From contig OZ320313.1 of assembly GCA_976226885.1 (NCBI GenBank), forward strand, positions 141,298,001-141,362,000: a stretch of 64,000 nt of DNA. Reading direction: 5' to 3'. Source of the stretch: Iphione sp. A-MEVVRFRX5. Its lineage: Eukaryota. This document shows positions 44,200 to 64,000 of the stretch, one piece after another (positions within the stretch are counted from its first letter, which is position 1; each line of letters starts with the position of its first letter). Under the pieces are notes generated by a model. That model ran no database searches, was not told the DNA's origin, and saw only the letters and a program-made list of their open reading frames with translations. The translations under genes and the position numbers were made by a program.

Positions 44200-44615
44200 T
44201 TAGTGTATAATGGACGTCACTTCAATACATGTATATACATGATGGTCCCCAACGAAGCCAACCGGCAGATGAAAGATCGACCCCTCGCTACAGGTCGTTA
44301 CAACTTAGGTATCATGATGTCACAAGTGCCAGGCATCCAGAGTCTCGTAAAGGATCACTGATAACATCTTTGTTGTTCATAAAGTGACTCGACACAAAAT
44401 AAAATGGCTTTACACTGTTTTAAAGGACTAGTTCCGCTTAGCACTGATACGAAGAACACAAGTTCCTGCCAGAAAAAAATTTTGTTTTCACCACTTACAG
44501 TACTTTGTAGTAAGGCTTTACTTCAGTATTTCTATCTGTACACTGTGCAATATTTTACCCTTTAAGAACATCTCTTCTAACAACACATCATCACCTTTAT
44601 CCGAACTGTGTTACA
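44200..44615 (-). repeat. 3' LTR of the minus-strand Gypsy, with PPT at 44616-44627
   Basis: On the minus strand ggaggggaggga is followed by TGTAACACAGTTCGG. 44294-44610 is a diverged direct repeat of 51421-51674. The distal boundary is uncertain. Confidence 0.8.
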
Positions 44616-47600
44616 TCCCTCCCCTCCTTGGAAGTAATGCGCAGCATTACGTAGTTTATTTCCCACCCTCGAACCAAAATTTCATCTAAATTCAGCCCTT
44701 GATGCTGAAGGCATCTCAAGTCAATATGCCTGAGACACCATGCTTCAATAGGGGACAGGACCACATCTGTTACTACCAGGTGGTAGGCATTATAGGTGTA
44801 ACTGGAATACACTGGACTGGATTCATTGGGGGGAGGATATCACAGGATTCAACCACTGTGATGAGTTTTACAAAACATTCCTTGTCTCTTTCATCAATTA
44901 ACAGTGACCTCATTAGCACCTTTGAGACAATGAAGTCACTTGTGACATTAGTTCCCCATTTTCCCGTTACAGGCAATATACAGCACCTATTAGAGTTAGC
45001 TTTTTCCAGAACTTACTTTTTTGCAGGTGTGGAAGATACTCACACATTTTGGATATTCAAGAGGAAGAGTAGAGGAGTGGCATGGCCCGGGTCTGTCACT
45101 ACCATACTAACCAAGAATGACCTGCACCATGCCAAAGAGATGCTCGCTTGGTGGGACAAGCCTAGCCCAGGGGCAACCATGAGGACATTTTTTGGAACGA
45201 ATATTTACAACTGAAAGTTATCCGTTATAGTGACCCAAGGGTTCTAGGACTGCTGCGTCTTTCTTACAGAAAATTCTTCAATAAAACCCCTTACTGTCTA
45301 AAAACATTTCTGCAAGGCAAGAGAGCAAACTAGGCAGTACCATGTTCTTGAAAAACAGGAGACAATAACGACGTACCAAGAACATTTACCACTTATGGTT
45401 AATTTGTCAATTACATCTTAATAACCACAGCCTGAGCAAGCAACAACTTGGTAATACAGGTCATTACAATGATACATGTAGCGCTACAATACACGGTTAA
45501 CAACATCATTACTTATGAGTAAACACTTATTAAAGGTCAAGCAAGAGTATCTGTCTCTCCTGCCAAGTCTGTAATTTTACCGTTCCTCTTTAACGAAACA
45601 CAGAAAAGGGTTGTTCATTCTGCATATACAGCTCTGTGGGGGCTTTAGCATTGGTAGGGTGATAAATCTCAAATCCCTTGGGACCTTGCTTAAATTTCAC
45701 CGTGCTACCATTAACACATTGAATTCACATGGAAAGAGCAACCAGGATGGTGACTACCCAATTACCTTGGTCAAGATATGTGCCTAGGGATCATCTCATC
45801 TAGGAAAAATCCTCACAACCCTCTTGGCCTGTTTATCTTTCATGGGGAACATCATTGGCCAACCAAAATAAATGTCAATAAAGGTCAGGAGATACATGTA
45901 CCCAGCTTCGGATTCCTGATATGGTCCACAGGTATTAACTTCTACCTTCTGAAATGGGAAGACAATGCTCTCCATTTCCCAAAGAGGTCTCAACTGCCTC
46001 CTCAAGTTCCGAGTATTACATGGAACACACACAGAAATATGAGCAACAACATCTTGAACAAATTCTCCCTGTAATATAGTGCTCATACATGGTCATACAT
46101 TTTATCTATCCCATATGTCCCATGCCATCATGTTCCTAATCCAGCACTACACTACGAAACACCTTAGGTACTATTAACCACAGGCAAACTTCCGGATGCT
46201 AGCTAACATAGTACCATAACTACTCCACCTTCCTGTGTTTGAAGCATGTCCGCTCCCTGCGAGTTGGTATTGGGAGTATCCAAATTCATGTTATTCCTGC
46301 TCAATATGGATGAGGAGTCCTCATGGGGCCCTGACTCCGAATCTGTAGAAGCCTGGTCAAGTGGAGCCACCCCACCCTCTTTTCTTGGGGCAATCAATTG
46401 TGGGTCCATTTGACCTGACCAGAGTCTACTCAAAGTATCGGCCTGGACATTCTCCTGACCAGGGATGTATTAAATCTCACAGTCATATTTAGAAAGTTGC
46501 ATAGCCCATTGCTGGATCTTAGCAGGAACAAGAACTTTTATGGCTTATGGTCTGTATGGATTATGAACTTATGCCCATACAAGTAAGCCTGAAACTTCCG
46601 GATCGCAGAGACAATGGCAAAGCCTTCCTTTTCAATCATGGGCCACCTCTGTTGAGTCTTGCTCAGGTGGTGCGACATGTACTGGATAGGTCTTTCGCTG
46701 TTGTCAAATTCTTATGCTAACATGGCTGCAATGCAGGTGTCACTTCTATCAGTATGAAGGATGAATACTCAATCAAACATAGGAAAGGCCAGCAACAGAG
46801 GATTAGTTTTTTCTTCAGTTGCTTCAAAAGCGAGCTGACATTCTTCAGTCCACTGGAACTTGGCACGTTTTCTAGTCATAGCAATCAATGGCACTACAAT
46901 CTGTGCAAAGGGGGGAACGTACCTACGGTAGAAACTAGCCATCCCAATAAAGGAATGAACACCCTTTATGTCCGGAGGCAGTTCCAACTGCAAAATGCTG
47001 GTAACTTTTCCTTCATCCAGCTGCACCCCGTCAGGTGTAATGACATGCCCAAGGTGCTGCGGACAGAAGTGACATTTGCTTCCCTGCAGCTTTAACCCAG
47101 CATTGCGTAGTCGATCAAACACCATTTGCAGATGGCATAAGTGTGTGGACTGGTCCAGAGACCACACCAATATGTCATTGATAGAATTAACGTACCATTA
47201 ATTCCATCTAGGCCTTGAGCCATCAGTTCGCAAAACACACTGGGGGCGTTACACAAGCCAAATGGCATTACATTGAATTTGATCAACCCAGCATGACAAG
47301 CAAATACCGTTTTGGGTCAAGAGGCTTCTTCCATGGGAACCTGATGATACCTGCTTCGGAGGTCAAGGTTAAAAAAACAAGTGCTACCTCCTAAATTCAC
47401 GAGGATATCATCAATATGGGGCAAAGGCCAATTAAACTTTGTCATCACATCATTGACTTGTCTAATCTACACAAAACCGCATGGAGCCATCTCTTTTCTC
47501 CATGAGCACAATCAGTGAAGCCCAGGGACTGCGACTAGTATGAATTATTCCCGTATACAACATCTCTTGGATCTTTTCTTCCACTACTGTCTGACACGAT

Positions 47601-48961: not shown

Positions 48962-49596
48962 CAGTAGAACCCCTCAACAACGGACACTGAAGGGACTGTA
49001 GCCAAAGCGTCCGTTGTCGGGGGTGTCTGCTGTGTCTGGGCTACCCCTTCTATCTCGGTAGGGGATCAGCGGCAGAAGGTAGGTTATCAATGGCAGAGAG
49101 TAGGATGGCAACAACAGAAGGTAGGACAGCAGTGGCAGAAGGTAGGATGGCAGCCGCAGAAGGTAGGACAGAAGGGGCAGAAGGTAGGATGGCAGTGGTT
49201 CCTCCAAGGTGACAAGACAAGGTCGCAACTCTCCCAGGTGTGGGGACTCATCAAAGGCATGGACCGTCAGGACAAGGTCGCGCTTCTCTCAGGTGTGAGA
49301 GTCCTTCAAAGAAGGGTGTCAGGACAAGGTCATGCCTCTCTCGGGTGTGAGAGTCCTTCAAAGAAGGTGTCAAGAAGGTGACTGACGGGTGGGTGTCTGC
49401 TGTAGACCCTGTAAAATCAGGGTTAGGGACTGTCTAGGGACTGTCCGAAGGTGGGGTGTCCGCTCTCTCTGAGTGTCCGCTGTGTCCAGGCGCCATTAGA
49501 CATGATAAAGAGGGTTTCTGTTTGGGACTGGCACCAGGGCATCCGCTGTAGGAGGCATCCGCTGTGTCCGGGCGTCCGTAGAGAGGGGTTCCCCTG
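48962..49596. mobile_element. Tc1/mariner-Tigger-like MITE inserted in gag
   Basis: TA-cagtagaacccctc ... gaggggttcccctg-TA (TA at 48960-48961 and 49597-49598). Internal 21-bp and roughly 52-bp tandem repeats. Removing it restores the gag frame KQKSNETVYMYSERLLDLA. Confidence 0.85.
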
Positions 49597-51226: not shown

Positions 51227-51674
51227 AGTGTCAGGTTTGATATCAGACTTTTATTCTTCTTCAGCAACTAGTACAGTGAGCCAGAAATTCAGCAGCAGCA
51301 GGAAGGCGAGTCTGACAAGAGTGTTGGACTGCTCATGTTATATACTCCACCTGCTAACAGTGACAACGCAGTTTACTTGTGCCGGACGTAGTCTTTCATT
51401 ACATGTCAACTACACATCAGGTTGTTACGACTTAGGTATCATGACATTAAAAGCGCCCGGCATCCAGGGTCTCATAAAGGATCACTGATCCTTCATTGTT
51501 CATAAAGTGACTCAACACAAAATAGAATCTGCCAGATGAAAAATTTTGTTTTTGCCACTTACAGTACTTCGTAATGAGGCTTTACTTCAGTATTTCTGTC
51601 TGTACACTATACAATATTTTACCCTTTAAGAACATCTCTTCTAACAACACATCATCACCTTTATCCGAACTGTG
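51227..51674 (-). repeat. 5' LTR of the minus-strand Gypsy
   Basis: Homologous to 44294-44610. On the minus strand it ends AATAAAAGTCTGATATCAAACCTGACA and is followed by a degenerate TGGTG PBS. The outer TGTAA is missing. Confidence 0.75.
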
Positions 51675-51699: not shown

Positions 51700-54600
51700 A
51701 GAGTTACCCCCTACTGAGGTGGGTAGGACGGTGAATCACGCAGACCAACCCCAAGACATGGAGCTGAATGACCTGTGCCATGTACTGAACTAACGAAGGG
51801 GCAAGGAGCGATTGACTGACAATGTACAACACTGGACCAAGCGAATTCTGACGGTGCTTCAAACTGGACAGGTGTCACAGGAGGTCACGCACTTTCTATG
51901 GTATGCCAGTGTTGGCCGTTGCCGGAACTTTGTGCCACCTGAAGAGCTACATCAGCTGGCAAGACATGACTAGGCTGCAAGACAACAACTCCATCACTCC
52001 ACAACCATGAAAATAAAAGGTGAGCGATAGTTTTGATCACTTTTCTGCCAAGAAATAGTCTGGGATTTGTGGAGGGTAGGATCCTAGAGAGACCTTCAAA
52101 AATTAAAAGAAAATGAATGCCTTGAAATAAGATTCTCAATCCTTAGGATACCTTGTTTTGATGATTATTGTATTTGTGGTCCTGGTAGGAATCTGGGCTA
52201 CCTGGCATGCAAGTTAATACCAGGATGGAGAATGGATGAGAGTCACTGTTCGGAAGGAGCCTGAACCCCATCCCTTAGCTTAAGAAGCTCAGACCTGCCA
52301 GACCCCATGAAAAAATCCAAAATTACAACAGTGTTTCCAGAGTATTGACAGGCATCTTGCCAAGGTCACTGAAAATTTAAGTATTCAGCTAAGCAGGTTG
52401 TACCTATTTTTGATGGGAAGCCAAAGAATTTTAAGCCATGGATGAAGGCCATTGAACATGCTACCCTAGGATTTGTCACTCAACCTCAGGCAGCCATATG
52501 CTTTAAGCAGCATTTAATACAACTAACTGCTGAGGGGCCGGTGGCTGATTATATCATTCAGTACATTAAGGAAGAAGACAACCGATTAAAGGGAGATGAC
52601 CCCCAGATCGTAGAACCTGTGTTGACACCACCTGAATGGGAAAGGTTCTGTAATCAACTCCCTCCAAGGTTTGGGGAAGTAATTGATCCCGTTTATGCTA
52701 AAGGACTATTAAGAAAGTGTAGGCTGTGTATGTGTATTCTGAGCGGTTGTTAGATCTAGCCTATGATGCATTTACCGAGGTAGAAATGCATCAGACTGTC
52801 ATGCAACAGAAGCTAGTTAAATTCTTTACCAATGGGTTGAAAAATGCCCAGGTTGCCCAAAAAATCATTCACGAAGCCCCGCAGGATTATGTTGCTGCAG
52901 TGAGGTGTGTGGGAGGAGAATCTGAGGTCCTCAGGCACATTACACTGAGGGGTCAAGATGAGCATACTCCTATGGAGGTTGATGCCATTGAGGCAAGTAA
53001 AAAGCAATTTAAAGGGAATTGTTACTGCTGTGGGACGCCGGTCCATGCAGCCAAAAACTGTTATGCTGCTAAGGCCAAGTTGAGGGATCAGAAGGAGGGT
53101 GGTCCTCAGACTCCACTTCCCAGGGTAGTGAAGAAGGTTCAGTGTTATGGTTGCAAGAAATACAAACACTTCCAGTCTCAGTGTCCTAGTAATACCACAA
53201 CCGATTAGGAGATCCTTGTAGAAGTGCAGGATGATGGACAGGCCAACTATTAAAATTAAGATCAGACCTTATGGGTACCACGCCCTGTTGGATACAGGGG
53301 CAGATGTGTCTGTAGTTAGGGAGGATGTGTATCGAAGCCTGAGACAAAGAGAGCTTGCCACTGCTGTGGGTCCTTTAGCCACAGCCTTACAAGGTGTGGA
53401 TAGGGGTGAATTGAAACAGGAAGGGACCACACTTATTGAATTTACCATGTTGGGAAAACCATTTTCCACCGAATTCCATGTAATAGCATGACCAAGGCCA
53501 ACTTTTATCCTTGGATGGAATTGGCTAGGCCAACATCCCATGCAGCTGTTACAGAGCAGGGATTTGTGAAGTGTGTGTCATTACTAATTCCCATGATTGG
53601 AGAACAGCAAATTGAAACAAAAGTATGTGCGGAGGCTGATACAGTTTTGCCATCCAGTACCAGTGTGCTGATGTTTGGGAAGTGAAGAAACAAGGGAGAT
53701 GCTAGTGAAGGATCCCCCATTGCTATGATTGTTTAGGGTACCTGCCAAAATTATCTGGCTGAGGAACCTGGAGTCATAGTGGCAAACTGTTTGACCCAAA
53801 CCACCATGATGATTGTGCCCGCCCTGATAGTCAACACCACCACACGGACCCTAATGATTAGGACAGGGAATGTTATGGCCAAAATGCTGCTGTTTGCATG
53901 GAGCTAGGGTTAATCCAGACCACCCTGCAACCCACTCCAAGGGCCATCACGGAGTCAGTAATGACTCTAGAGGAGTTGCTGGCTAATAACGAGGACCTCT
54001 TTGCGGCCTTGGATGTGGAGTTGGGATGCACTCACTTGGCTACCATGGATATTGACATGAACTTATAGCACAAAAGCCTTATCATACTCCCCTGTCATGA
54101 CAAGCAGTAGTGGAGGAAAAGATCCAGGGAACATTGGATGCTCGGATAATCTGCACTAGCCGAAGCCCATGGGCCTCACCTATCATGTTGGTGGAGAAGA
54201 AGGACAGCTCCATGAGGTTTTGTGCAGATTATAGAAGGGTTAATGATATCACCATCAAGTTTAATTGGCCCTTGCCTCACATCAATGATATCCTAGCTAA
54301 ATTGGGAGGTAGCACATGTTTTTTGACACTTGACCTTAGGAACAGGTATCATCAGGTTCCCATGGAAGATACCTCTTGGCCCAAGACAGCTTTCGTATGC
54401 CACACCTGTTTTGTGAATTTAATGTGATGCCATATGGATTGTGTAATGCACCCAGTGTATTTTGTGAACTGATGGCCAAAGTCTTGGACAGAATTAATGG
54501 CACATTCACAACGGCTTATACTGATGACATATTGGTGTGGTTGCCTGATCAGTCCACACACTTGCGTCATCTGCAAATGATGTTTGATTGGTTACGTAAT

Positions 54601-56380
54601 GCAGGACTCAAACTGAAAGCAGAGTAAGTGTGACTTCTTCTGTCCACAATTGCAGTACCTGGGGCATGTCATTACACCCCATGGTGTGTAGGCGGACCAA
54701 GTTAAGGTTGCTAACATTGCGGAGCTGGAGCTGCCTACCAATGTTAAGGGAGTCTGTTCTTTTATTGGGATGGCTAGTTTCTATCGGAGGTATGTTCTGG
54801 CTTTCACAAAGAAGCAGAGCCGTTGATTGCCATGACAAGGAAGCATGCTGAGTCCCATTAGACCTCTGAGTGCCAAGTAGTTTTTGAGACACTGAAAGAC
54901 AAACTTACTAATCCTCCATTATTGGCCTTTCCAATGTTTGCCTGTGTTTTCATCCTGTACACTGATGTGAGTGATGCCTGCATCTGAGCCATGTCGGCAC
55001 AAGAATTTGATAATGGCGAGAAGCCTATTCAGTATATGTCACACCACCTTAGTGAAACTCAACAGAGGTGGCCCATAATCAAGAAGGAAGGCTTTGCCAT
55101 TGTCTCTGCAAATCTGAAAGTTTATAGTCCGTACTGATCACAAGCCATTAAAGTTCCTGTATAAGTCTAAACAGAAGAATGCTAAGGTCCTACAATGGGC
55201 TATGCAACTTTCTGAAATACCATCCTGCTGTGAACGATAATGTTGAGCAGATGCACCAAGTTTGGAATGATGTCATGACTAAGTTGGCTTAGGGAGATAT
55301 GGCATACTTGGAAAGGCCCATACCCTCTGCTTTGTTGGTTTTGCATATGAGTATGAACGAGTCAACAAGGTATACCTCATGTATGCAAGGGACCCAGTAT
55401 TGCTCCAACCACAGTTGAGGTATTATGGGGAGGAGCATCATAAGCTTGCTTTACAGTGACATCATCAGGCAATGACGGTGGTTCATAGGAATGTCACTAA
55501 GGCACGACGGTGCATGAAGAAGTACCATGACCAACGAGCCACCAATGTGTCCTTTGAAATAGGGGATCCAGTGTATGTACAGAACCCCCTGCATTGTCAT
55601 AAGCTTAATTTGAGGTAGTAAACTTAATCATGAAAAAGCTTACTCCTGTCAACTTTGTGATAAAAGATCAGGTGACGGGGAAGTTGATGAAGGTCCATAG
55701 TGATCGTTTGCACTTGACTAACCTTGACTGGCAGTTGCCGAAATGTGATGGTGGGAGACTGCACCATTGTGTTGCATTAGCCGGAGATGGGATGCCTTCC
55801 AATTTAGATGGAAGTTTGTCCAGGCCATTGAATGGTTCCAATGGGTTATATTCCCCAGATGAGATTTCCCTTGCCTAGTTATTTGAAAGAGAATGGCAGC
55901 ATGAAATTTGTGATCTGCAGAATGACCCAATCTTCAACAGGAAGAGGGACAGGTCGAGGTGGAGGGCCCAGTTGCTGGAAACATTGATCCACCAGGTCAG
56001 GTGCATCAACCTGATGAGATAGTACCTGGTCCCGAGGCCGAGGACCATGGTGAAGGGTTAGGAGTGTTGTGTGACCAACTGGTCACCCATACAGTAAGGT
56101 AACATGAGGCTGGAGAGGAGGCTATTGCTCCAGTCAAAACGCTGGTTATCCCACTAGTGGGAGGGGAGCAACCTTGGTGGAGACAAGGTGATCTGCCAGA
56201 GGACCCAGTGCTGTGGGCAGACAGGACACATCCCCCCACTTATGCCAACAGAAGGAATCAGGGACCCAAAGGGAACCACGTTATCATACTGGGCAGTTAT
56301 GAAAAGGGAACAAACCTTGGCAAGTGAATTGCCACCTATGCAGAAACGGGCCTGTCAAGAATAGACACAGGGGCCATGGT
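51700..56380 (+). mobile_element. Decayed Ty3/Gypsy element related to the minus-strand copy, interrupted by the young element
   Basis: ORF0 relic 51758-52036. Gag 52442-53208 (PMEVD, CYCC...H..KNC). Protease ALLDTGADVS at 53231. RT SRSPWAS/YTDDILV 54110-54900. RNase H about 54950-55200. Integrase core deleted, C-terminal VHSDRL at about 55700. Confidence 0.9.
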
Positions 56381-56382
56381 AT

Positions 56383-56569
56383 TGTTGCGGGCTCCACTCA
56401 GCGGAGCCCGCTGTTGGCGGAAGTTGAGAATTTGGGGCTCCGCCCGGAGTAGCATTCTGTATATAAGTCGGGCCGGGCGGAGCTTCGTTGTCATTAGTGT
56501 CCTGTCTCTTAAGGAATAAACTTCATCAACTGTTATCTTGGAGTCATGTCCCTTCGATCGGGGCAAACA
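56383..56569 (+). repeat. 5' LTR (about 190 bp; 5' boundary 56383 or 56412)
   Basis: TGTTG start, TATATAAG 56460-56467, Inr TCATT 56491-56495, AATAAA 56515-56520, end GGGCAAACA at 56569. A 9-bp hairpin gcgggctcc/ggagcccgc lies at 56387-56411. Confidence 0.8.
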
Positions 56570-57808
56570 ATTGGTGACAGCGGTGGGATCCCTGCCCTAG
56601 GGGCTGAGGCGGAGGAGGAGGCGGAGGTAGTCAAGCTCCGGGCGGAGTCGGCAGAGCCGGCGGAGCCCGGCGAGTCAGCGGAGGTCGCCGAAGAGCTGCC
56701 GGAGCCCGCCTGGCTCCGCCCGGAACCCGCCACTGACTGGGACGCACAGTCCATGGAGGGGAGCCAGCCTCTGGGTAGCGGGGATGCCCAAACAAGAGAT
56801 GAGGTGGGGCATGGGACTGACGAGGAAGAAAGAGAGCACGGAGCCCCTACCTCATCCGCCCCACACACATTCAATGAGGACACTGATGACCACCCTCCTC
56901 CGGAGGAAGACGAAGGAGAGGGGGAGCCGACCGACCAGGCAGCTGAACCGCTTTGGACTAGCTTCGTCCGGGAGCTGAGTTCTGCCCTTCGACCGGAAGG
57001 AGGAAGTAAGAAGAGCCTGGTGAAACCTGACACTTACGATGGGAGTACGCCCTTGCGGGACTTCCTACAACATTTTGAGCTGGTGGCCCTGGCAAACCAT
57101 TGGGGGGCCGGAGAGAAAGCCATCCAGTTAGGCATCACCTTGAGGAAGTTGGCTCGGGCGGTCCTACGGAGTTCGGGGATCGATGTGGAGAAGCCCCGAG
57201 CTTACCAGGAACTGGTGGCCGCCCTCATGGAGAGGTTCCAGTCCAAGCACCAGACAGATGCATACATCCAGCAACTGAAGGGGTGTCGGCAGGGGAAGGC
57301 CGAGGCCCTGGCGGACCTTGCAGACGAAATTGAGCAATTGGTACAGCTGGCCTACCCCGAGGCGAAGGGGGCCTGGAAGGACCGGATGTGTCGCGAATAC
57401 TACGTCGGGGCCCTCAGCAACGAGAAGATTCGGAAGTGGGTGACCCAGGCCCGAGTGGCAACCTTCCGTGAGGCGTTGTCAGCATCGCAAGTAGCGGAAT
57501 CTTACTATCAGCACAAGTCCGAAAGGGTGGGACCCAAGCGTGTGCATAAGCTGGAAGTGGCCACAGAGGAAGCTCCAACCAACAAGCCCACCCCCGGGAC
57601 CGAGGCTACAGCGGCGGGCTTCGAGCGGCTGGAGCTCCTGCTCCAACAGCTACTGGCAGGCCAACAAGGGGTGGAGAAGGAGAATCGCCGGCCAAATAAC
57701 AAGAAATGCTTCAATTGCGGGGAACTCGGGCATTTCAAGCGCAACTGTCCCCAGCCCTTGAAGGAGCAACCGTCGGGAAACAGGGCGGCGGCCGCCCCTC
57801 GCCAGTAG
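56546..57808 (+). CDS. gag: Gag (420 aa): acidic N-terminus, capsid-like domain, CCHC zinc knuckle
   Basis: KPDTYDGSTPLRDFLQHFELVALANHW, LMERF, LKGCRQG...LADLADEIEQL..LAYP and CFNCGELGHFKRNC. Confidence 0.93.
   Translation: MSLRSGQTIGDSGGIPALGAEAEEEAEVVKLRAESAEPAEPGESAEVAEELPEPAWLRPEPATDWDAQSMEGSQPLGSGDAQTRDEVGHGTDEEEREHGAPTSSAPHTFNEDTDDHPPPEEDEGEGEPTDQAAEPLWTSFVRELSSALRPEGGSKKSLVKPDTYDGSTPLRDFLQHFELVALANHWGAGEKAIQLGITLRKLARAVLRSSGIDVEKPRAYQELVAALMERFQSKHQTDAYIQQLKGCRQGKAEALADLADEIEQLVQLAYPEAKGAWKDRMCREYYVGALSNEKIRKWVTQARVATFREALSASQVAESYYQHKSERVGPKRVHKLEVATEEAPTNKPTPGTEATAAGFERLELLLQQLLAGQQGVEKENRRPNNKKCFNCGELGHFKRNCPQPLKEQPSGNRAAAAPRQ
56572..56589 (+). other. Primer binding site TGGTGACAGCGGTGGGAT (probably tRNA-Leu)
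   Basis: 18 nt, 2 nt after the LTR end. The complement ATCCCACCGCTGTCA-CCA has a Leu-like T-stem (ATCCCAC) and an A discriminator. Confidence 0.8.
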
Positions 57809-57819
57809 AGAGGGCGGCC
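57775..57819 (+). other. -1 programmed ribosomal frameshift signal at the gag-pol junction
   Basis: G GGA AAC heptamer in the gag frame (57775-57781), an 8-nt spacer, then stem ggccgccc(ctc) / (gag-a)gggcggcc (57790-57819). Pol is in the -1 frame. Confidence 0.8.
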
Positions 57820-60111
57820 AGTCCCCAACCCCACTTGGAAGAACATCTCCGGATGATTCAGCTGTCCTGTGGGCGGGAGGTCACTCTGGAAGGGGAGAGT
57901 GGCCCCACAACGAACATCACGCTACCTAGTGAAATCGACGGTCGGATAGTCCCCTGGTTAGTGGATACCGGAGCGTCGCTGACCCTGCTGTCGGAAGAAG
58001 TCGCCGACACCCTGCCGCTCGGAGAATTGGAGCCGACAGTGGGGTGGATTTTGTGTGCAGACAGGAAACCCCTACGAGTGAAGGGGAGGACGAGGTTGAA
58101 GGCGAGTTTCCAAGGGATCGAGCTGGAAGTCAAGGCTTGGGTTGCCCAAATCGACTGCCCCGCCATCTTGGGGCTGGATACGCTTCGCAAATGGAAAGCA
58201 CAGGTGGACACGGAGGGGGCCGCACTGCGGGTGCGGGTCCCCGAGGACAACGGCGCGAGTGGATGCCGGGCAGAGTTGGCGGAAGATTGCCACCTGGATG
58301 GGAGGAGTGCAGTGCAGGCCCCCTTGCGATGGGCGGGGCTGGAGACCGACACTGGACCCGTGGTGGTGGAAGCCTCCCCCGAGTGGGAGGGTGGCTCGGG
58401 GATGCTACTGGCACGGACGGTGTGCCAGGCGGGAAGTCAGTCCGGAGTGGCGGAAATAACCAACCCTGGCCCCGTGGGGCGTCGACTGAGAAAGGGAACC
58501 ATTGTCGGCAGGGTCCAGCGGGTGGATGGGCCGGTGCAGGCCGTTCCGGAGTGCGAAGAGGTGGCGGACGAGGACGTGGAGCTAGGACCAGCGCTCAGGA
58601 CCCTGCTAGAGCGCCTACCACCCATGACTACAGATGAGCGGCAAGGGATCGAACAGATGTTGCGGTGTAACGCGCGCTGTTTCCAGGAGGACGGGCAACC
58701 ACTTGGGCACACTGACACGGTTCAGCATTGGATTGACGTACAAGGACATGCCCCTATCCGGCAGAGGGTACGCCGCCTTCCCCCGGTGAAGAAAGCGCTG
58801 GTACAGCAAGAAGTGGACCAGATGCTGCAGCAGGGGGTACTAGAGGCCTCTACCAGCCCGTGGGCGTCTCCCGTGGTTCTGGTCCGGAAGAAGGACCAAT
58901 CCTGGCGATTTTGCATCGACTACCGTGCCCTTAATCGAGTAACGAAGAAGGATGCCTACCCCCTCCCGTGGATTGATGAGACATTGGACGCGTTGGAGGG
59001 AGCACGGTTTTTCTCGGCAATCGACCTGGCCAGTGGCTATTGGCAGGTAGGGGTGAGACCAGAGGATCGAGAGAAGACGGCTGTTTGTACTCCCGGTGGG
59101 CTCTACCAGTTCCGGGTCATGCCCTTCGGACTGTGTAATGCGCCCTCCACCTTCGAGCGGTTGATGGAGGCGGTGCTCCGGGGCCTGGTTGGACAGTCTT
59201 GCCTGGTCTACCTGGACGATGTGATCGTGATAGGGAGGACGGTAGAAGAAATGACCCGCCGACTCGACGAAGTCTTCAGCCGCCTGGGGGAGGCCGGACT
59301 TAAAGTAAAGCCGCAGAAGTGTCAGCTGTTCCAGAGGGAGGTGGCCTATCTGGGGCATCGTGTGTCTGAAGAGGGGGTCCAGCCCGACCCTGAGAAGATC
59401 CGGGCCATCCAAGAGTGGCCTCCACCGCGCTGCATCACGGAATTGAGGAGCTTCATCGGACTGTGCTCCTACTACAGGAGCTTCGTGGAGGGGTTCGCAA
59501 TGCTGGCGGCCCCCCTGCACGGACTCTTGGAGAAAGGAAAGGAGTATCGCTGGGATACCGAATGTCAGCAGGCGTTTGAACAATTGAAGGGACGGTTGGT
59601 GACGGCCCCCGTCTTGGCGTACCCGCGACCGGAGGGACAGCTAGTGCTGGACACCGATGCGTCAGCAGCTGGAATCGGAGCCGTACTGTCACAAGAACAG
59701 CAAGGACAGGAGTGGGTGTTGGCCTACGCCAGTCGAAGTCTCGCGCGTCCAGAGAAGAACTACTGTGTCACCCGGAAAGAACTGTTGGCGGTAGTCTTCG
59801 GCCTGCGTAAGTTTTGCTCTTATGTTGGAGGGCGAAAGGTGGTCATCCGGACGGACCATAGTTCATTACGTTGGCTATGCAGCTTCAAGGAACCGGAGGG
59901 ACAGTTGGCCCGTTGGCTCGAGGAAGTCCACTGTTATGACTTGGAGGTGATACACCGCCCGGGAAGAAAGCACGGGAACGCCGATGGCCTTTCGCGAGTC
60001 AAGTGCCCCCAGTGTGGACGGGACCCGGAGGAGGATCTGCCGACCCTGGGGCAAGTCGGTGTTGGTGGCCCCTGCCACATTGGACTCCCTAGCCCAAGCC
60101 CAGAAGGCTGA
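57775..60111 (+). CDS. pol: Pol part 1: aspartic protease, reverse transcriptase, RNase H
   Basis: LVDTGAS; SPWASPVVLVRKKD; IDLASGYWQV; VMPFGLCNAPSTF; YLDD; DTDASAAGIGAVLSQ; RTDHSSL; NADGLSR. Confidence 0.95.
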   Translation, partial: GKQGGGRPSPVERAASPQPHLEEHLRMIQLSCGREVTLEGESGPTTNITLPSEIDGRIVPWLVDTGASLTLLSEEVADTLPLGELEPTVGWILCADRKPLRVKGRTRLKASFQGIELEVKAWVAQIDCPAILGLDTLRKWKAQVDTEGAALRVRVPEDNGASGCRAELAEDCHLDGRSAVQAPLRWAGLETDTGPVVVEASPEWEGGSGMLLARTVCQAGSQSGVAEITNPGPVGRRLRKGTIVGRVQRVDGPVQAVPECEEVADEDVELGPALRTLLERLPPMTTDERQGIEQMLRCNARCFQEDGQPLGHTDTVQHWIDVQGHAPIRQRVRRLPPVKKALVQQEVDQMLQQGVLEASTSPWASPVVLVRKKDQSWRFCIDYRALNRVTKKDAYPLPWIDETLDALEGARFFSAIDLASGYWQVGVRPEDREKTAVCTPGGLYQFRVMPFGLCNAPSTFERLMEAVLRGLVGQSCLVYLDDVIVIGRTVEEMTRRLDEVFSRLGEAGLKVKPQKCQLFQREVAYLGHRVSEEGVQPDPEKIRAIQEWPPPRCITELRSFIGLCSYYRSFVEGFAMLAAPLHGLLEKGKEYRWDTECQQAFEQLKGRLVTAPVLAYPRPEGQLVLDTDASAAGIGAVLSQEQQGQEWVLAYASRSLARPEKNYCVTRKELLAVVFGLRKFCSYVGGRKVVIRTDHSSLRWLCSFKEPEGQLARWLEEVHCYDLEVIHRPGRKHGNADGLSRVKCPQCGRDPEEDLPTLGQVGVGGPCHIGLPSPSPEG

Positions 60112-61897
60112 GCCCGAAGTGGCGGCCCTCATTCAAGCCTGGGAGGCAGAAGAGCCCCTCCCTGGACTGACTGGTAGTGATTCCCCGGAGGGGAGGTGGC
60201 TGAAGAGCGAGTCACGGCGGCTGAAGATGAAAGACAATCTGCTTTGTCGACGCTGGGAGGCAGAGGACGGAACGCTGTGCTACCAGGCTTATGTGCCCCA
60301 GCCATTGAGATACGACATCTGGTGTGAAGTCCACGCGGGAGCGCTGGGGGGGCACCTCAGCGCCGAGAAGACAGAAGGTGCCCTCCGCCGGAAATATTGC
60401 TGGCCAGGACTCCGACACGATGTGGAACGTTGGGTGAAGGCTTGCCGTGAGTGCCAGCAGCGACAGGATCCGGCTCGCCGGCACCGGGCTCCCCTTCAGC
60501 TTCGGGTGGCCCCGGCCCCGTGGGAGTTCATAGCCGTGGATGTGTGTAGACCTTTCCCCGAGACAGAGCGAGGAAACAAGTACATCATTGTGGTGGCGGA
60601 TCACTTTACGAAGTGGACGGAGGCATTCCCCACTCCGGAGGTCACGGCGGCGAAGACAGCAGACGTCCTACTCCGAGAAATCATCTGTCGATACAGCCCC
60701 CCCCGTATTCTTCATTCCGACCAGGGCCGGAACTTCAAGGCGGCAGTGATGCGGGAACTCCTACAGATGCTGGGCATTCAACGGTCACGCACCACTCCGT
60801 ACCATCCCCAGAGTGATGGAGTCGTCGAAAGGTTCAACTGCACCCTCTTAGGAATGTTGGCCAAGGTGGTCCGGGAAGATCAATCCGACTGGGACCTCCG
60901 AGTGCCCTTCATTCTGGCGGCCTACCGGGCTACCCCGCACTGTACCACCGGGTTCTGTCCGAACTGGTTAACCTTACAACGCGAGACCACGCTTCCGGTG
61001 GAGCTGATGGTGGGCAGCCCCCGAGACGAGCCACAATCAGCTTCCGACTATGCCAAGCAGATTAGGGAGCGCTACATTCAAGGCCACCAGTTAGCCCGGC
61101 GCCACTTACAGAAGTCGGCCGAGCATCAGAAGGATTGGTACGATCAGCGAGTTTGTGAGCAAGAATTCGACGTTGGCGATCAAGTTTGGGTCTACTCACC
61201 GATAAAGAAGAAGGGGCGGTCCCCCAAATTGCAAAGTCGCTGGTTAGGACCGTGGACAATTCAAGCCAGGCTCAGTGCTGTCATCTACCGCATCTCTCGA
61301 AACCAGAAGACTCGGGTTGTCCATGCAGATCTGCTAAAGAAAGCGATCTCTCCTAGTTCAGAGGAAGAAGAAAGACTCGGGCGAGTGTGTGTCATCACCC
61401 TGATGCCGGACACGGATGCGGCCCCGGGGGGTGCGGGCCAACCTACTGTGCCCCTGCCCCGCTGGTACCGCTGTAGGCCTAAGACAACTGGCCAGCCGCC
61501 TGTGGTTCCCCACAGGAGCACCAGGGACAACAGGATGCCCCCGCCCCAGCAACGCCCTCCAATACAACGGATCCCCCAAGGCTGGGTGGACTTGGTGGCC
61601 CGGGAACTCCGTCTCCTGAGTGACCGGACTTGCCAAGTCCTGCTCCAATCGCGGGAAGTCGCGGGACGGAAGAGAGGAGAGAAGCCAGGCCCCTGCCCGG
61701 GGACCTACCGTCGGGCATGGCAGAGACTGCGAGGAATCAGGAGGAGGTTGCAGAGACAGTATGGCGGACGCGCGGTGCAGCACCTGGTGGAGACCCTCTG
61801 GAGGAAGATCGGAGAAAGAAGACACCCAGCCTGGGGTCGGCGACAGTTGAAGACGTCGAGCGGAACTCGCCCTGAGCCCTGGCGGAGCACACCCTAA
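60074..61897 (+). CDS. pol: Pol part 2: integrase (HHCC, DDE, GPW) plus a C-terminal extension of about 185 aa; separated from part 1 by a +1 frameshift
   Basis: VHAGALGGHL...CRECQ; AVDV, HSDQGRNF, DGVVERFN; RWLGPWTI; VVHADLLK. Confidence 0.92.
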   Translation, partial: ATLDSLAQAQKAEPEVAALIQAWEAEEPLPGLTGSDSPEGRWLKSESRRLKMKDNLLCRRWEAEDGTLCYQAYVPQPLRYDIWCEVHAGALGGHLSAEKTEGALRRKYCWPGLRHDVERWVKACRECQQRQDPARRHRAPLQLRVAPAPWEFIAVDVCRPFPETERGNKYIIVVADHFTKWTEAFPTPEVTAAKTADVLLREIICRYSPPRILHSDQGRNFKAAVMRELLQMLGIQRSRTTPYHPQSDGVVERFNCTLLGMLAKVVREDQSDWDLRVPFILAAYRATPHCTTGFCPNWLTLQRETTLPVELMVGSPRDEPQSASDYAKQIRERYIQGHQLARRHLQKSAEHQKDWYDQRVCEQEFDVGDQVWVYSPIKKKGRSPKLQSRWLGPWTIQARLSAVIYRISRNQKTRVVHADLLKKAISPSSEEEERLGRVCVITLMPDTDAAPGGAGQPTVPLPRWYRCRPKTTGQPPVVPHRSTRDNRMPPPQQRPPIQRIPQGWVDLVARELRLLSDRTCQVLLQSREVAGRKRGEKPGPCPGTYRRAWQRLRGIRRRLQRQYGGRAVQHLVETLWRKIGERRHPAWGRRQLKTSSGTRPEPWRSTP

Positions 61898-61963
61898 CGG
61901 GGCGGAGCCCGCCCAGAGACCGAGCTCCAGGCGGAGATTACACCGCACTCTGCCGCCATCCAG

Positions 61964-62064
61964 CCAATCAGAAGCAGACGCGGGAAAGTTCGACCAATCA
62001 GCGACTGGCGGAGCTAGCCCTGAAGGGATATAAGCTGGCGGCCCTAGAAGAGGCGATTCATTCC
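61964..62064 (+). promoter_or_regulatory. Internal RNA pol II promoter for ORF3
   Basis: CCAATCA at 61964 and 61994, TATAAG at 62029, and a perfect Inr TCATTCC at 62058-62064 (A is 31 nt from the TATA). Confidence 0.75.
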
Positions 62065-62265
62065 GTCCATCGCCGCGCTCCACCCACCCAGAGATACTTC
62101 CCGAATATTTCCCGCCCGGAACTGAGTACGTCTGCGGAGGTTTCCGCGGAGTTCGACCGGAGTTCGTCCAAGTCGCTGCCGGAGCTCGCAGACAGGCGGA
62201 GCTCGCTACACAAAGTCAGCGGAGCTCGCCCGGCGGAGCTTGCCCTACCAGAACCCGAGAAGACC

Positions 62266-64000
62266 ATGACATCCAGAGGGAGAGCCCAGTACTGCCAGTA
62301 CTGTGGCTACATTTCTGACAAGCCGGGCAATTTCGATAGGCACATGTTAACCCATGGGAAGCAGGGGTTCGTCCGCCGCTGTCCGGTGCCCCGTTGCCAG
62401 GGGGCACACTTCGGCCGCCAGGATGACTTCCGGCGGCACCTGGAGAACAAACACAAGCAAGACGCCGACAACCCCCTCGTCCTGGGCCAGGACGTAGACC
62501 TGGAGTTTATAGACCTGGTCAGTGGCCAGAACGTGCCTGTCCCAGAGTGTCGCCGAGAGGAGTACCAGCGGCAGCTGAAGGTGGAGGCGTACGAGCGGGA
62601 GAAGGAAGCAGCCATGATCCGGGGGGAGGCCCCCCCACCGCGACCCAAGTTAGCTCGGAAGCCCCCCCGGGGAAGGAAGGCGTCAGCTGCCGCAGGCCGC
62701 CCTCCTCCTCCCCCCCGGGACGACAACCCAGAGGAGGACGAGGATGTGGAGGAAGAGACGGGGGCTACGGAGGGGCCCCGCCTGCGCCCCCGAGTCGGGC
62801 GTGGGGGACAGGTCTCCTCCACCGTGGCCACACCAGGGGCAGGCCACCCACCAGTCACCCCGGGTTCTTCGGCCTCAGTAGACATTCCGCTGTTCGGGCT
62901 CGACGTGTCGCCAGAGGTTCCAGAGGTGCGGATCGGCCGCAAGGTCCGCAAGTCTACGGGAAAAGCGGCTAACCGAAGTACATCAGCAGGAGAGACGCCC
63001 ACCGTTCCTGCACCGGCGAGCCCGGCCGCACCGGGGTCCGCCTCTGCCGCCTCCACGCCTGGGGCTGCTCGGGTGCGCGGCCTTCCCCCCACCAGATCCC
63101 GACCCGCCGAGTCGTCTGGGGAGTGGCCAACCCCCTCCATCCCTGGGAAGGACTTGGACTTCCAGGCCATGCGGGACGAGGCCGATCGAAGGAAGAGGAG
63201 GTACCAGCCACAGACCTCTCCCGTCACCCCGGCTAGTCTCCCCTCACCTGCGAAGAAGGTCGCCAACATTACGTCCTCCACGATGTCGCCGCTACACCGG
63301 GCGGTGATTGCCGCGGGGATTCGGGACCGCACCCCCCAGTCCACTCCCGCTTCCACTAGTTCGTCCTACAGTGAGGCGGCATGGGAGCTGGACGCGCGAC
63401 TAGGAGAAGGGTGGGAGAACGTGGAGAGGGAGAAGCGGCCCAAGGACATGGTGGTGATTGGATCGGATCCGGAGTCCGAGGACGAAACCCAGGTGGAAGA
63501 CGCTACCGCCGCCTCTGAACCATTGGCCGAGCAGCTCAGCGCGAGCCTGGGGACCCCCTGTGGGCGCATCCGCTACGCCCGGCTGGATGTGGCAGGGGGG
63601 ACCCCGGCGGATGATACAGCAGCTGAGGACGTTCCCTTGTCTGAGGGGGAAGCCGCCCTCACCCTGGCGGAGCTCGCGGGGGAAGAGCTCCGCCCGGAGC
63701 ACCCGGCGACAGAGACCGAACCTGGCGGAGCTCGCCCCGAGCCGGCGGAGCCCGCCCCTACCCAGCCGCCGGAGACGACTGTTCAGCCCTCAGAGCCTGG
63801 CCGGGCTCCGCCGACGGGGCACCAACCAGAGGCACCTGAGCAGCCGCTGACGACGCCGGAGCCCGATACCAGGGCTGAGCCTACCCCCCCCCGGCACTCC
63901 CGGGACGGCGCACTGAAGCAGGGGCAGGGGAGACCCTGCCCAAGGAGATCCCCCCGGCACTCCCGGGACGGCGAGGGGAGGAGCCGGCACCTACCCTGCC
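62266..64000 (+). CDS. ORF3: tandem C2H2 zinc-finger protein with a long Pro/acidic disordered tail (at least 578 aa, 3' incomplete)
   Basis: ACCATG start with no stop to the window end in my codon-by-codon translation. ZF1 is CQYCGYISDKPGNFDRHMLTH and ZF2 is CPVPRCQGAHFGRQDDFRRHLENKH. Basic patches RKPPRGRK and RRKRR. Confidence 0.88.
   Translation, partial: MTSRGRAQYCQYCGYISDKPGNFDRHMLTHGKQGFVRRCPVPRCQGAHFGRQDDFRRHLENKHKQDADNPLVLGQDVDLEFIDLVSGQNVPVPECRREEYQRQLKVEAYEREKEAAMIRGEAPPPRPKLARKPPRGRKASAAAGRPPPPPRDDNPEEDEDVEEETGATEGPRLRPRVGRGGQVSSTVATPGAGHPPVTPGSSASVDIPLFGLDVSPEVPEVRIGRKVRKSTGKAANRSTSAGETPTVPAPASPAAPGSASAASTPGAARVRGLPPTRSRPAESSGEWPTPSIPGKDLDFQAMRDEADRRKRRYQPQTSPVTPASLPSPAKKVANITSSTMSPLHRAVIAAGIRDRTPQSTPASTSSSYSEAAWELDARLGEGWENVEREKRPKDMVVIGSDPESEDETQVEDATAASEPLAEQLSASLGTPCGRIRYARLDVAGGTPADDTAAEDVPLSEGEAALTLAELAGEELRPEHPATETEPGGARPEPAEPAPTQPPETTVQPSEPGRAPPTGHQPEAPEQPLTTPEPDTRAEPTPPRHSRDGALKQGQGRPCPRRSPRHSRDGEGRSRHLPC

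What the first reader, a model, noticed from the sequence alone, without database searches (positions are those of the whole stretch)
62266..64000. Gypsy element carries a third, non-env ORF encoding a tandem C2H2 zinc-finger protein
Seen: an uninterrupted frame of at least 578 codons downstream of integrase, where env normally sits. It has a strong ACCATG context, two C2H2 fingers at the N-terminus, a charged helix (CRREEYQRQLKVEAYEREKE), NLS-like basic patches and a long Pro/Glu/Ser-rich tail. No signal peptide or transmembrane segment is visible. It is absent from the ORF track only because it has no stop in the window. Established: known extra 3' ORFs of Ty3/Gypsy elements are mostly env-like or of unknown function, and I do not recognise a described family with a transcription-factor-like C2H2 ORF here. 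Inference: a captured or element-evolved nuclear regulator.
Basis: partly seen in the sequence, partly recalled or inferred. Interest (0 to 1): 0.9.

Follow-up and report, generated by a model that had tools for sequence, protein, structure and literature searches.

The report
Gypsy retrotransposon with zinc-finger third gene
A GC-rich Gypsy-type retrotransposon carries, where an envelope gene would sit, a real third gene for a soluble protein that starts with two C2H2 zinc fingers; its nearest sampled relative has a similarly placed and built gene inside its terminal repeats, so this is probably an undescribed, fast-evolving accessory gene of unknown function.

Summary
The frame at 62266-64000 is open for 578 codons, and for 708 from 61876. 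None of 2,000 composition-matched simulations reached 578, and the other five frames carry 8-17 stops. It starts at the first in-frame ATG, has two correctly spaced C2H2 fingers (aa 10-63), a confident charged helix, and no signal peptide or TM segment.

It lies in a Ty3/Gypsy element: 5' LTR 56383-56569, PBS, gag, PR-RT-RH-IN. No 3' LTR occurs before the window ends.

The key evidence is the nearest sampled relative (RT-RH 64%, IN 45% identical, same PBS). Four copies in another assembly carry an ORF between IN and the 3' LTR that also opens with two C2H2 fingers at the same offset. Two young copies have near-identical LTRs, their own target-site duplications and unrelated flanks. Four more distant relatives have the 3' LTR 12-290 bp after IN.

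Caveat: sequence similarity between the window's ORF3 and the sister gene does not exceed that of a generic finger protein, so common origin rests on position and architecture. That gene evolves much faster than gag-pol (31% versus 83-91% identity).

The function is inferred, not shown: a nuclear nucleic-acid-binding regulator. No such Gypsy ORF3 was found in the literature searched.

The parts
56383..56569 (+). 5' LTR of the GC-rich Ty3/Gypsy element, about 187 bp, with TGTT...AACA ends, TATATAAG at 56460 and AATAAA at 56515
   Evidence: Read directly from the sequence. The TATATAAG-to-AATAAA arrangement matches the L001 LTR. The end is fixed by the conserved PBS. G+C rises from about 45% to 59% here.
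56572..56589 (+). Primer-binding site, 18 nt, differing at one base from the L001 PBS; the tRNA was not identified
   Evidence: In both elements the PBS lies 2 nt after the LTR's terminal CA.
56546..57808 (+). gag, 420 codons from the first ATG, which lies in U5; a second in-frame ATG with a CCATGG context is at 56753. No breaks.
   Evidence: Pfam zf-CCHC at 32.4 bits, with weak Retrotrans_gag and Ty3_capsid matches. It is 28% identical to L003 gag. In-frame ATGs are listed.
57706..61897 (+). pol (PR, RT, RNase H, IN with H2C2, rve and p58_C domains), plus an Arg-rich tail of about 180 aa without homologs. It reads in two frames: one frame change between RNase H and IN, and no in-frame stops.
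   Evidence: Pfam hits. RT-RH is 64% and IN 45% identical to L001/L003, whose pol is one continuous 1194-aa ORF in L003. The tail is shown.
61898..62265 (+). Spacer between IN and ORF3, with CCAAT at 61964 and 61994, TATAAG at 62029, eight sense-strand GCGGAG copies, and a pyrimidine-rich stretch ending in AG 15 nt before the ATG (candidate splice acceptor)
   Evidence: The spacer shares 40 distinct 7-mers with the LTR/leader, against 12.1 +/- 4.6 in shuffles (0 of 500 reached 40) and a mean of 12.2 for gag-pol pieces.
62266..64000 (+). ORF3, partial: 578 codons, with the stop beyond the window
   Evidence: No relatives were found among predicted proteins. The gene in the sister family has the same position and build.
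62293..62454 (+). Two C2H2 zinc fingers (aa 10-63)
   Evidence: Pfam PF13909 at 28.0 bits against a cut-off of 27, PDB two-finger modules, and the ligand spacing found by pattern search.
62554..62622 (+). Charged alpha-helix (aa 97-119)
   Evidence: AF2 blocks with pLDDT 79-91. A comparable confident charged helix lies at aa 154-186 of the L001 protein.
63667..63750 (+). Third cluster of the GGCGGAGC-type word (3 copies), inside the ORF3 coding sequence

Best explanation
ORF3 is a genuine third gene of a Ty3/Gypsy LTR retrotransposon lineage. It is neither an envelope gene nor a chance open frame. It encodes a soluble protein with, in order: an N-terminal pair of C2H2 zinc fingers, a charged helix, basic NLS-like patches, a long disordered Pro/Ala/Ser/Glu-rich stretch, and an acidic block. 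The nearest sampled relative family carries a gene of the same build between IN and the 3' LTR, and that gene was mobilised with the element. The simplest reading is a single gain in the common ancestor of the two families, followed by very fast divergence. What is shown: the frame, the fingers, the absence of membrane features, the position in the element, and the situation in the sister family. What is inferred: the protein enters the nucleus and binds nucleic acid through the fingers to regulate the element's own expression. It would act either as a DNA-binding activator, or as an RNA-binding factor for the genomic RNA in the way CERV of Cer1 works. Candidate targets are the sense-only GGCGGAGC-type arrays in the LTR/leader, in the spacer upstream of ORF3 and in the ORF3 3' part. 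Expression would come from a subgenomic message, either spliced to an acceptor just upstream of the ATG or started at the CCAAT-CCAAT-TATAAG block in the spacer. My confidence is about 0.8 that it is a real element gene and about 0.35 for the specific regulatory role; the figure given is for the whole statement.
For: The open frame is far beyond chance. Codons 1-130 show coding-type periodicity. The fingers are supported, and the absence of a TM segment or signal peptide. The element context is set by the LTR, PBS, gag and pol, with no LTR copy before the window end. The sister family is the best match in both RT-RH (64%, next best 59%) and IN (45.5%). L001 has 747-bp LTRs 99.87% identical enclosing a 611-aa ORF that starts with Met-x-Ser-Arg, has its first Cys at residue 10 and carries two fingers. 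L003 is a second insertion with 100% identical LTRs, its own 4-bp target-site duplication and unrelated flanks. L009 has an intact 800-codon version and L008 a broken one. The start context GCACCATGGC is invariant in all four copies. In the more distant relatives L002, L005, L006 and L007 the 3' LTR starts 12-290 bp after IN. Between L001 and L003, pN/pS is 0.38 for the ORF3-like gene, 0.11 for gag and 0.03 for RT-IN. The two proteins share a charge layout and composition, and both have a confident charged helix. The GGCGGAG word occurs 14 times against 1.9 expected, mostly in the sense orientation, in three clusters and in different reading frames. LTR/leader and spacer share an excess of words. 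The precedent for a non-env nuclear regulator in this position is CERV (PMC10309623), and ORF3s of LTR elements are usually expressed from spliced messages (PMC5408684).
Against: The window ends before the stop codon, PPT and 3' LTR, so this copy is not shown to be LTR-bounded. No second copy of this exact family was found anywhere. Sequence similarity to the sister gene is not above generic: hhalign gives E 2e-4 and 46% probability, a plain HMMER profile misses the window's ORF3, and an unrelated blowfly C2H2 protein scores better against the same profile (E 1.5e-5, 80%). Finger 2 spacing also differs, C-X4-C here against C-X-C in the sister. The pN/pS estimate rests on only 14 differences. 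Two of the four sister copies are broken. The excess of words shared between LTR and spacer is not reproduced in L001 (26 observed, 31 expected), so the target-array idea has support in this element only. Both structure models are of low confidence. No expression data exist, and the tail shows weak codon periodicity.
Confidence: 0.55

Rival explanations
1. Counter-defence factor. ORF3 is an element gene, but its job is to interfere with host silencing, for instance by competing with host factors that bind the element. On this view it does not regulate the element's own expression directly, and an arms race drives its very fast evolution.
For: Within the sister clade the ORF3-like protein is about 31% identical where gag, pol and IN are 83-91% identical. 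Its middle is hypervariable and carries repeat expansions, while both ends are conserved. pN/pS is higher than for gag and pol.
Against: No domain or homolog points to any defence pathway. Fast evolution fits relaxed constraint on a disordered protein equally well.
Confidence: 0.15
2. Passenger or decaying capture. A host zinc-finger gene fragment was picked up and is carried without any role for the element. The frame is still open only because the capture or the insertion is recent and the sequence is GC-rich.
For: Two of the four sister copies are broken. The tail lacks codon periodicity. G+C is 67%. Similarity to the sister gene is no better than generic.
Against: No simulation reached 578 open codons. 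A gene of the same build persists across two sister subfamilies whose gag-pol differ by 11-14% at the DNA level, and it keeps the zinc ligands, the start context and a C-terminal block of about 100 residues at 51-57% identity. L009 keeps 800 open codons although its gag and pol are each split. No host parent was found among 1.84 billion representative proteins.
Confidence: 0.12
3. Not part of the element. The Gypsy copy is truncated at its 3' end after IN, and 61898-64000 belongs to a neighbouring GC-rich gene or to another mobile element. The sister family's zinc-finger ORF would then be an independent acquisition.
For: The 3' LTR is not in the window. A CCAAT-CCAAT-TATAAG block precedes ORF3 and could be a stand-alone promoter. 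Sequence homology to the sister gene is unproven.
Against: G+C stays high without a break from 56383 to 64000, in a host background of about 40%. The GGCGGAGC-type word and an excess of shared 7-mers link the spacer to the LTR/leader of the same element. The frame opens 22 nt before the IN stop. Two independent gains of an ORF starting Met-x-Ser-Arg, with the first Cys at residue 10 and two fingers, at the same place in the two closest sampled relatives, is less parsimonious than one gain.
Confidence: 0.1
4. Integration-targeting factor. The fingers tether the pre-integration complex to particular genomic sequences, as DNA-binding or chromatin-binding modules do in other retroelements.
For: The two-finger module is of the DNA-binding type. 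The 7 nt directly 5' of the LTR are identical in the window and in L001.
Against: It is a separate protein, not fused to IN. L003 has a different flank. Three insertion sites are far too few to show a preference.
Confidence: 0.08

Closest known systems
CERV of Cer1, the C. elegans Ty3/Gypsy element (PMC10309623)
   Same: [quoted passage not shown] Both are lineage-restricted with no homologs elsewhere and have no membrane features. CERV is nuclear and regulates the element's own genomic RNA, and it is made from a spliced message.
   Different: No sequence similarity was detected: neither whole-database search with ORF3 returned anything but generic finger matches. The zinc-finger mentions I saw in that paper concern gag's CCHC fingers, not CERV. 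Splicing, nuclear location and function are untested for ORF3.
Non-env ORF3s of bdelloid rotifer LTR retrotransposons: GDSL lipase, DEDDy exonuclease, coiled-coil and TM types (PMC5408684)
   Same: They are family-specific extra ORFs downstream of pol that were gained in recent branches and are missing from earlier ones. This matches the pattern seen here, where more distant relatives lack the gene.
   Different: Those are enzymes or membrane proteins. None is a zinc-finger protein, and Pfam finds none of those domains in ORF3.
Env genes of errantivirus-type Ty3/Gypsy elements in metazoans (PMC13524379)
   Same: Same position after IN, and expression from a subgenomic message is expected.
   Different: ORF3 has no signal peptide, TM segment or fusion-protein domain.
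Accessory regulators of complex retroviruses, meaning transactivators and RNA-export factors. This is named from general knowledge as a functional analogy only; no sequences were fetched or compared.
   Same: They are small nuclear nucleic-acid-binding proteins encoded 3' of pol, made from subgenomic RNA or an internal promoter, and acting on repeated target elements in the element's own LTR or RNA.
   Different: They are unrelated in sequence and fold as far as the searches show. This is an analogy, not membership.
Two-finger C2H2 DNA-binding modules: BCL11A fingers and Tramtrack (PDB 9e6s, 2drp)
   Same: They are the best solved-structure matches to aa 4-64, and both fingers align.
   Different: The E values are only 0.0015-0.03. 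There is no canonical TGEKP-type linker and no KRAB, BTB or SCAN partner domain.

Membership tests
Ty3/Gypsy (Metaviridae-type) LTR retrotransposon | gag with a CCHC knuckle, then pol in the order PR-RT-RNase H-IN | tested here: met
   Pfam hits in that order. The closest proteins are metazoan Gypsy pol proteins.
Ty3/Gypsy (Metaviridae-type) LTR retrotransposon | 5' LTR with TG...CA ends followed by a PBS | tested here: met
   LTR at 56383-56569 and PBS at 56572-56589, the PBS differing at one base from the L001 PBS.
Ty3/Gypsy (Metaviridae-type) LTR retrotransposon | Matching 3' LTR, PPT and target-site duplication | not testable with these tools
   These lie beyond base 64000. No copy of the LTR occurs inside the window.
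Env-type ORF3 (errantivirus-like) | Signal peptide, TM anchor and a fusion glycoprotein domain | tested here: not met
   Maximum 19-residue hydropathy is 0.76 and the N-terminus is hydrophilic. There is no Pfam env domain.
C2H2 zinc finger | Ligand spacing C-X2-4-C-X12-13-H-X3-5-H, present twice | tested here: met
   Ligands at aa 10/13/26/30 and aa 39/44/58/63.
C2H2 zinc finger | Score above Pfam's curated cut-off | tested here: met
   PF13909 scores 28.0 bits against 27, a narrow margin. PF00096 scores 18.0 against 25.2 and does not pass.
C2H2 zinc finger | Beta-beta-alpha fold | tested here: inconclusive
   The AF2 single-sequence model has pLDDT 52. The secondary structure is compatible with the fold, but confidence over the fingers is low.
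ORF3-like gene of the sister family (L001, L003, L008, L009) | Located between IN and the 3' LTR on the sense strand | tested here: met
   The window ORF3 starts 368 bp after the IN stop. The sister genes lie 2.3-2.9 kb after IN and inside the LTR pair.
ORF3-like gene of the sister family (L001, L003, L008, L009) | Met-x-Ser-Arg start, first Cys at residue 10, two fingers, then a charged helix and a long disordered tail with an acidic block | tested here: met
ORF3-like gene of the sister family (L001, L003, L008, L009) | Sequence similarity above that of unrelated C2H2 proteins | tested here: not met
   hhalign gives E 2e-4 and 46% probability for the window ORF3, against E 1.5e-5 and 80% for a blowfly finger protein. 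hmmsearch finds no hit.
ORF3-like gene of the sister family (L001, L003, L008, L009) | Conserved C-terminal block of about 100 residues | not testable with these tools
   The window ends at codon 578, before the expected C-terminus. The block itself has no Pfam or PDB match.
CERV-like regulator (Cer1) | Detectable sequence homology | tested here: not met
   The searches with ORF3 returned no such protein.
CERV-like regulator (Cer1) | Spliced mRNA, nuclear location and a requirement for genomic RNA export | not testable with these tools
   No transcript or protein data are available. Only a candidate acceptor AG lies 4-15 nt before the ATG in each lineage.
Host KRAB/BTB/SCAN zinc-finger gene | Partner effector domain and long arrays of linker-joined fingers | tested here: not met
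   There are only two fingers, no partner domain in Pfam and no canonical linker.

The most novel reading that the evidence does not exclude
A lineage of animal-type Gypsy retrotransposons has evolved its own sequence-specific zinc-finger regulator. The regulator would recognise arrays of a short word, GGCGGAGC-type in this element, placed in the LTR/leader and in front of its own gene. That would form a self-contained autoregulatory circuit comparable to those of complex retroviruses. The fingers and their target words would co-evolve so fast that orthologs become unrecognisable within a family. It would be the first retrotransposon-encoded C2H2 accessory protein, the same protein class that hosts use to silence such elements.
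Probability: 0.2. Interest if true: 0.8.

Novelty: new variant of a known kind. Interest (0 to 1): 0.55.

Why it matters
Extra genes in LTR retrotransposons are usually assumed to be envelope genes, and the few characterised exceptions have changed how these elements are understood. CERV, for example, controls nuclear export of the Cer1 genomic RNA.

A C2H2 finger protein encoded by the element itself would be notable, because C2H2 proteins are the class hosts use to recognise and silence retroelements. An element-encoded one could act as an activator, an RNA chaperone or a decoy.

The sister family also shows how such genes escape detection. The gene evolves about five times faster than gag-pol, is missed by homology searches, and in one copy the automatic gene caller annotated the antisense strand instead. 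Accessory genes of this type may therefore be systematically overlooked in animal genomes.

Tried and rejected
- **Protein searches with ORF3.** The whole-ORF3 word-indexed search found nothing. The exhaustive HMMER search of 1.84 billion representatives gave two marginal hits. One is a translated tandem repeat and is spurious. The other is a generic blowfly finger protein.
- **Exact look-ups.** The window's pol and IN ORFs are not on record.
- **Search with the L001 finger region.** It found only a second copy in the same assembly.
- **Other libraries.** PHROGs and NCBIfam gave nothing. Rfam and tRNA scans of the window and loci gave nothing, so the tRNA matching the PBS is not identified.
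- **Promoter scan.** The bacterial-type promoter scan does not apply to a eukaryotic element.
- **Structure models.** The ORF3 N-terminus (pLDDT 52) and the L001 protein (pLDDT 40) were too poor for fold searches, so none was run.
- I dropped it and did not reroute it.
- **First finger pattern too strict.** My first pattern missed L001 and was replaced by profile searches.
- **Rejected: a second word parallel in L001.** The idea that L001 has a parallel word, AGCCTAC, shared by LTR and spacer failed the global shuffle test.
- **Rejected: sequence-proven orthology.** The idea that the window's ORF3 is a sequence-proven ortholog of the sister gene failed the generic-finger control.
- **Uninformative loci.** L010's contig ends 400 bp after pol. 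L004 has no LTR pair.
- **Host organisms.** The host of the window and of assembly ERZ25767047 could not be identified.

- My notes and some script outputs list the tool-called bounds of ORF pieces of split genes, which bracket the breaks.
- The alignment tools printed consensus lines on their own.
- All related loci were endogenous retrotransposon copies reached through the finding's own proteins.
Full report
**1. The observation**

The frame at 62266-64000 (+) translates into 578 codons without a stop. It is open from 61876, giving 708 codons, and 62266 is the first in-frame ATG. The region is 67% G+C, which makes open frames cheap, and a 349-aa antisense ORF overlaps it. Even so, the other five frames of 61898-64000 carry 8-17 stops. 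None of 2,000 composition-matched simulations reached 578 open codons; the maximum was 466.

Codons 1-130 have the same codon-position G+C pattern as gag and pol. The tail does not.

The N-terminus holds two correctly spaced C2H2 fingers at aa 10-63. Pfam PF13909 passes its cut-off narrowly, 28.0 bits against 27. The best solved-structure matches are the two-finger modules of BCL11A and Tramtrack, at E values of 0.0015-0.03. The charged helix at aa 97-119 is the only confidently modelled part. There is no TM segment or signal peptide.

**2. The element**

Upstream lie a gag with a CCHC knuckle and a pol with PR, RT, RNase H and IN. pol reads in two frames, with one frame change between RNase H and IN and no in-frame stops. 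In the relative L003, pol is one continuous 1194-aa ORF.

G+C jumps from about 45% to 59% at about 56383. There a 187-bp LTR begins with TGTT and ends with AACA, and it carries TATATAAG followed by AATAAA 55 nt later. Two bases after its end comes an 18-nt PBS that differs at one base from the PBS of the nearest relative, at the same distance from that relative's LTR end.

Nothing resembling this LTR occurs between IN and the window end. ORF3 is therefore either internal to the element or beyond a truncation. The element sits at the 3' side of an older, decayed retroelement.

**3. Relatives**

ORF3 has no detectable relative among predicted proteins or in JGI metagenomes. The IN search returned only metazoan Gypsy elements, the best at 45% identity.

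That best hit, P0003, is also the best RT-RH match, at 64% against 59% for the next. Its locus L001 is an 11.7-kb element with 747-bp LTRs that are 99.87% identical. Between IN and the 3' LTR it carries a 611-aa ORF. That ORF starts Met-Ala-Ser-Arg, has its first Cys at residue 10, carries two C2H2 fingers, and continues into a long Arg/Ala/Ser/Glu/Pro-rich tail.

Three more copies were found in the same assembly.

| Locus | LTRs | ORF3-like gene | Source calls |
|---|---|---|---|
| L001 | 99.87% identical, 4-bp target-site duplication | Intact, 611 aa | 28, 34, 35, 104 |
| L003 | 100% identical, own 4-bp target-site duplication, flanks unrelated to L001 | One frame break | 37, 49, 74, 104 |
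| L009 (older subfamily) | Remnants 83-90% identical | Intact, 800 codons; the gene caller annotated the antisense strand instead | 72-77, 87 |
| L008 (older subfamily) | Remnants 83-90% identical | Broken | 72-77, 87 |

All four copies keep the start context GCACCATGGC. The gene is thus part of the transposing unit in the sister family. In four more distant relatives (L002, L005, L006 from a spider, and L007) the 3' LTR starts 12-290 bp after IN, leaving no room for such a gene. The pattern fits a gain in the common ancestor of the window's family and the L001 family.

**4. How strong is the link between the window's ORF3 and the sister gene?**

By sequence it is weak. BLASTP gives 36.6 bits over the fingers. 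HMMER finds nothing, either pairwise or with a profile of three sister proteins. hhalign gives E = 2e-4 and 46% probability over aa 1-83. As a control, an unrelated blowfly finger protein run against the same profile scored better, at E = 1.5e-5 and 80% probability. Sequence therefore does not prove common origin.

What does link them is shared layout:

- the position in the element;
- the Met-x-Ser-Arg start and first Cys at residue 10;
- identical ligand spacing in finger 1;
- a short hydrophobic block after finger 2;
- a confident charged helix containing an RREE patch;
- the same charge layout: a basic first half, an acidic block around aa 400-500, and a basic end.

Loss of sequence similarity is expected. 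Within the sister clade, gag, pol and IN are 83-91% identical, but the ORF3-like protein is about 31% identical. Only the first 130 residues (46-49%) and a C-terminal block of about 100 residues (51-57%) can be aligned. Window and L003 are already down to 28% in gag and 45-55% in pol. I put common origin at about 0.75.

**5. Constraint**

Between L001 and L003 the ORF3-like gene shows 6.5 synonymous and 7.5 non-synonymous differences, giving pN/pS of 0.38. The values are 0.11 for gag and 0.03 for RT-IN. This suggests purifying selection weaker than on the core genes, but 14 differences are too few to be firm. Conservation of the zinc ligands and of both ends across subfamilies, and 800 open codons in L009 although its gag and pol are each split, point the same way.

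**6. Expression signals (inference)**

The 368-bp spacer holds two CCAAT boxes, a TATAAG, and a pyrimidine-rich stretch ending in AG 15 nt before the ATG. L001 has a textbook acceptor 4 nt before its ATG, with tandem repeats carrying CCATTGG upstream. L009 has an AG 12 nt upstream. Either a spliced subgenomic RNA, which is the usual route for ORF3s (PMC5408684), or an internal promoter is possible. No donor could be pinned down.

**7. Possible targets (inference)**

The most over-represented words in the window element belong to one GGCGGAGC-type word. GGCGGAG occurs 14 times against 1.9 expected, with 5 antisense copies; TGGCGGA occurs 11 times against 0.9 expected, with none antisense. GGCGGAG is confined to the LTR/leader (5 copies), the IN end and spacer (6) and the ORF3 3' part (3). 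It occurs in different reading frames, so it is not a peptide repeat. The LTR/leader and spacer share 40 distinct 7-mers, against 12 +/- 5 in shuffles. The same test is negative for L001, so this supports a shared regulatory word in this element only.

**8. Comparison with known systems**

The closest functional precedent is CERV of Cer1. It is a non-env, nuclear, lineage-restricted protein in the env position that is needed for export of the genomic RNA (PMC10309623). Rotifer LTR elements show family-specific non-env ORF3s of other types (PMC5408684). The metazoan env survey mentions no zinc-finger ORF. No paper in the library links a Gypsy ORF3 with C2H2 fingers. Repbase and Dfam could not be searched.

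**9. Verdict**

- **Observation:** confirmed.
- **Interpretation:** supported as to what the ORF is. It is a third, non-env, zinc-finger gene of a Gypsy lineage.
- **Function:** remains an inference.
- **Novelty:** a new variant of a known kind, namely LTR retrotransposons with a non-env accessory ORF3.
- **Interest:** moderate to high for transposon biology, limited by the missing 3' end, the lack of other copies of this exact family, and the absence of expression data.

Noticed in passing
window 52400-56300 (+): An older, heavily decayed retroelement at about 45% G+C lies directly upstream of the GC-rich element, with a retroviral protease fragment at 53231-53491 and RT fragments at 54110-54627.
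   Followed up: partly
window 44291-44610 and 51418-51674: Direct repeats 86-94% identical lie 7.1 kb apart and may be the LTR pair of another old element. Between them are a 21-nt tandem array (49057-49194), a 50-nt repeat family (49211-49367) and a weak RT fragment (46769-47170, minus strand).
   Followed up: no
window 5090-5965 (-): An integrase-core (rve) fragment from a further decayed element. The first 56 kb of the window look like retroelement debris, with no recognisable host gene, tRNA or Rfam family.
   Followed up: no
window 61334-61897 (+): The IN reading frame continues for about 180 residues after the last IN domain as an Arg-rich tail with no homolog. The L003 pol ends right after the IN domains.
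   Followed up: partly
window 61876-62265 (+): The ORF3 frame is already open 22 nt before the IN stop and stays open through the spacer for 130 codons. That length alone is compatible with chance.
   Followed up: partly
window 56376-56382 and L001 6214-6220: The 7 nt directly 5' of the LTR (ATGGTAT) are identical in the window and in L001, while L003 differs. This could be a target preference or a coincidence.
   Followed up: no
L009 13265-15667 (+): The ORF3-like gene is intact at 800 codons in an old copy whose gag and pol are each split. The automatic gene caller annotated a 502-aa antisense ORF instead. The middle of the protein is a large Pro/Ser/Thr/Ala repeat expansion.
   Followed up: partly
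L001 6076-6136 and 17976-18036: A perfect 61-nt repeat lies outside both LTRs, about 85-145 nt from each. This is unexplained; the element may have landed in a local repeat.
   Followed up: no
L001 14615-14902; L001 13623-14285: The spacer upstream of the sister ORF3-like gene contains a 64-nt tandem repeat of about 4.5 units, each with a CCATTGG box, and a second diverged 276-nt repeat pair.
   Followed up: partly
L001 20283-22301; L010 1284-5570: Neighbouring mobile elements of other classes: an RT plus tyrosine-recombinase-like pair next to L001, and an endonuclease-RT LINE-type ORF next to L010.
   Followed up: no
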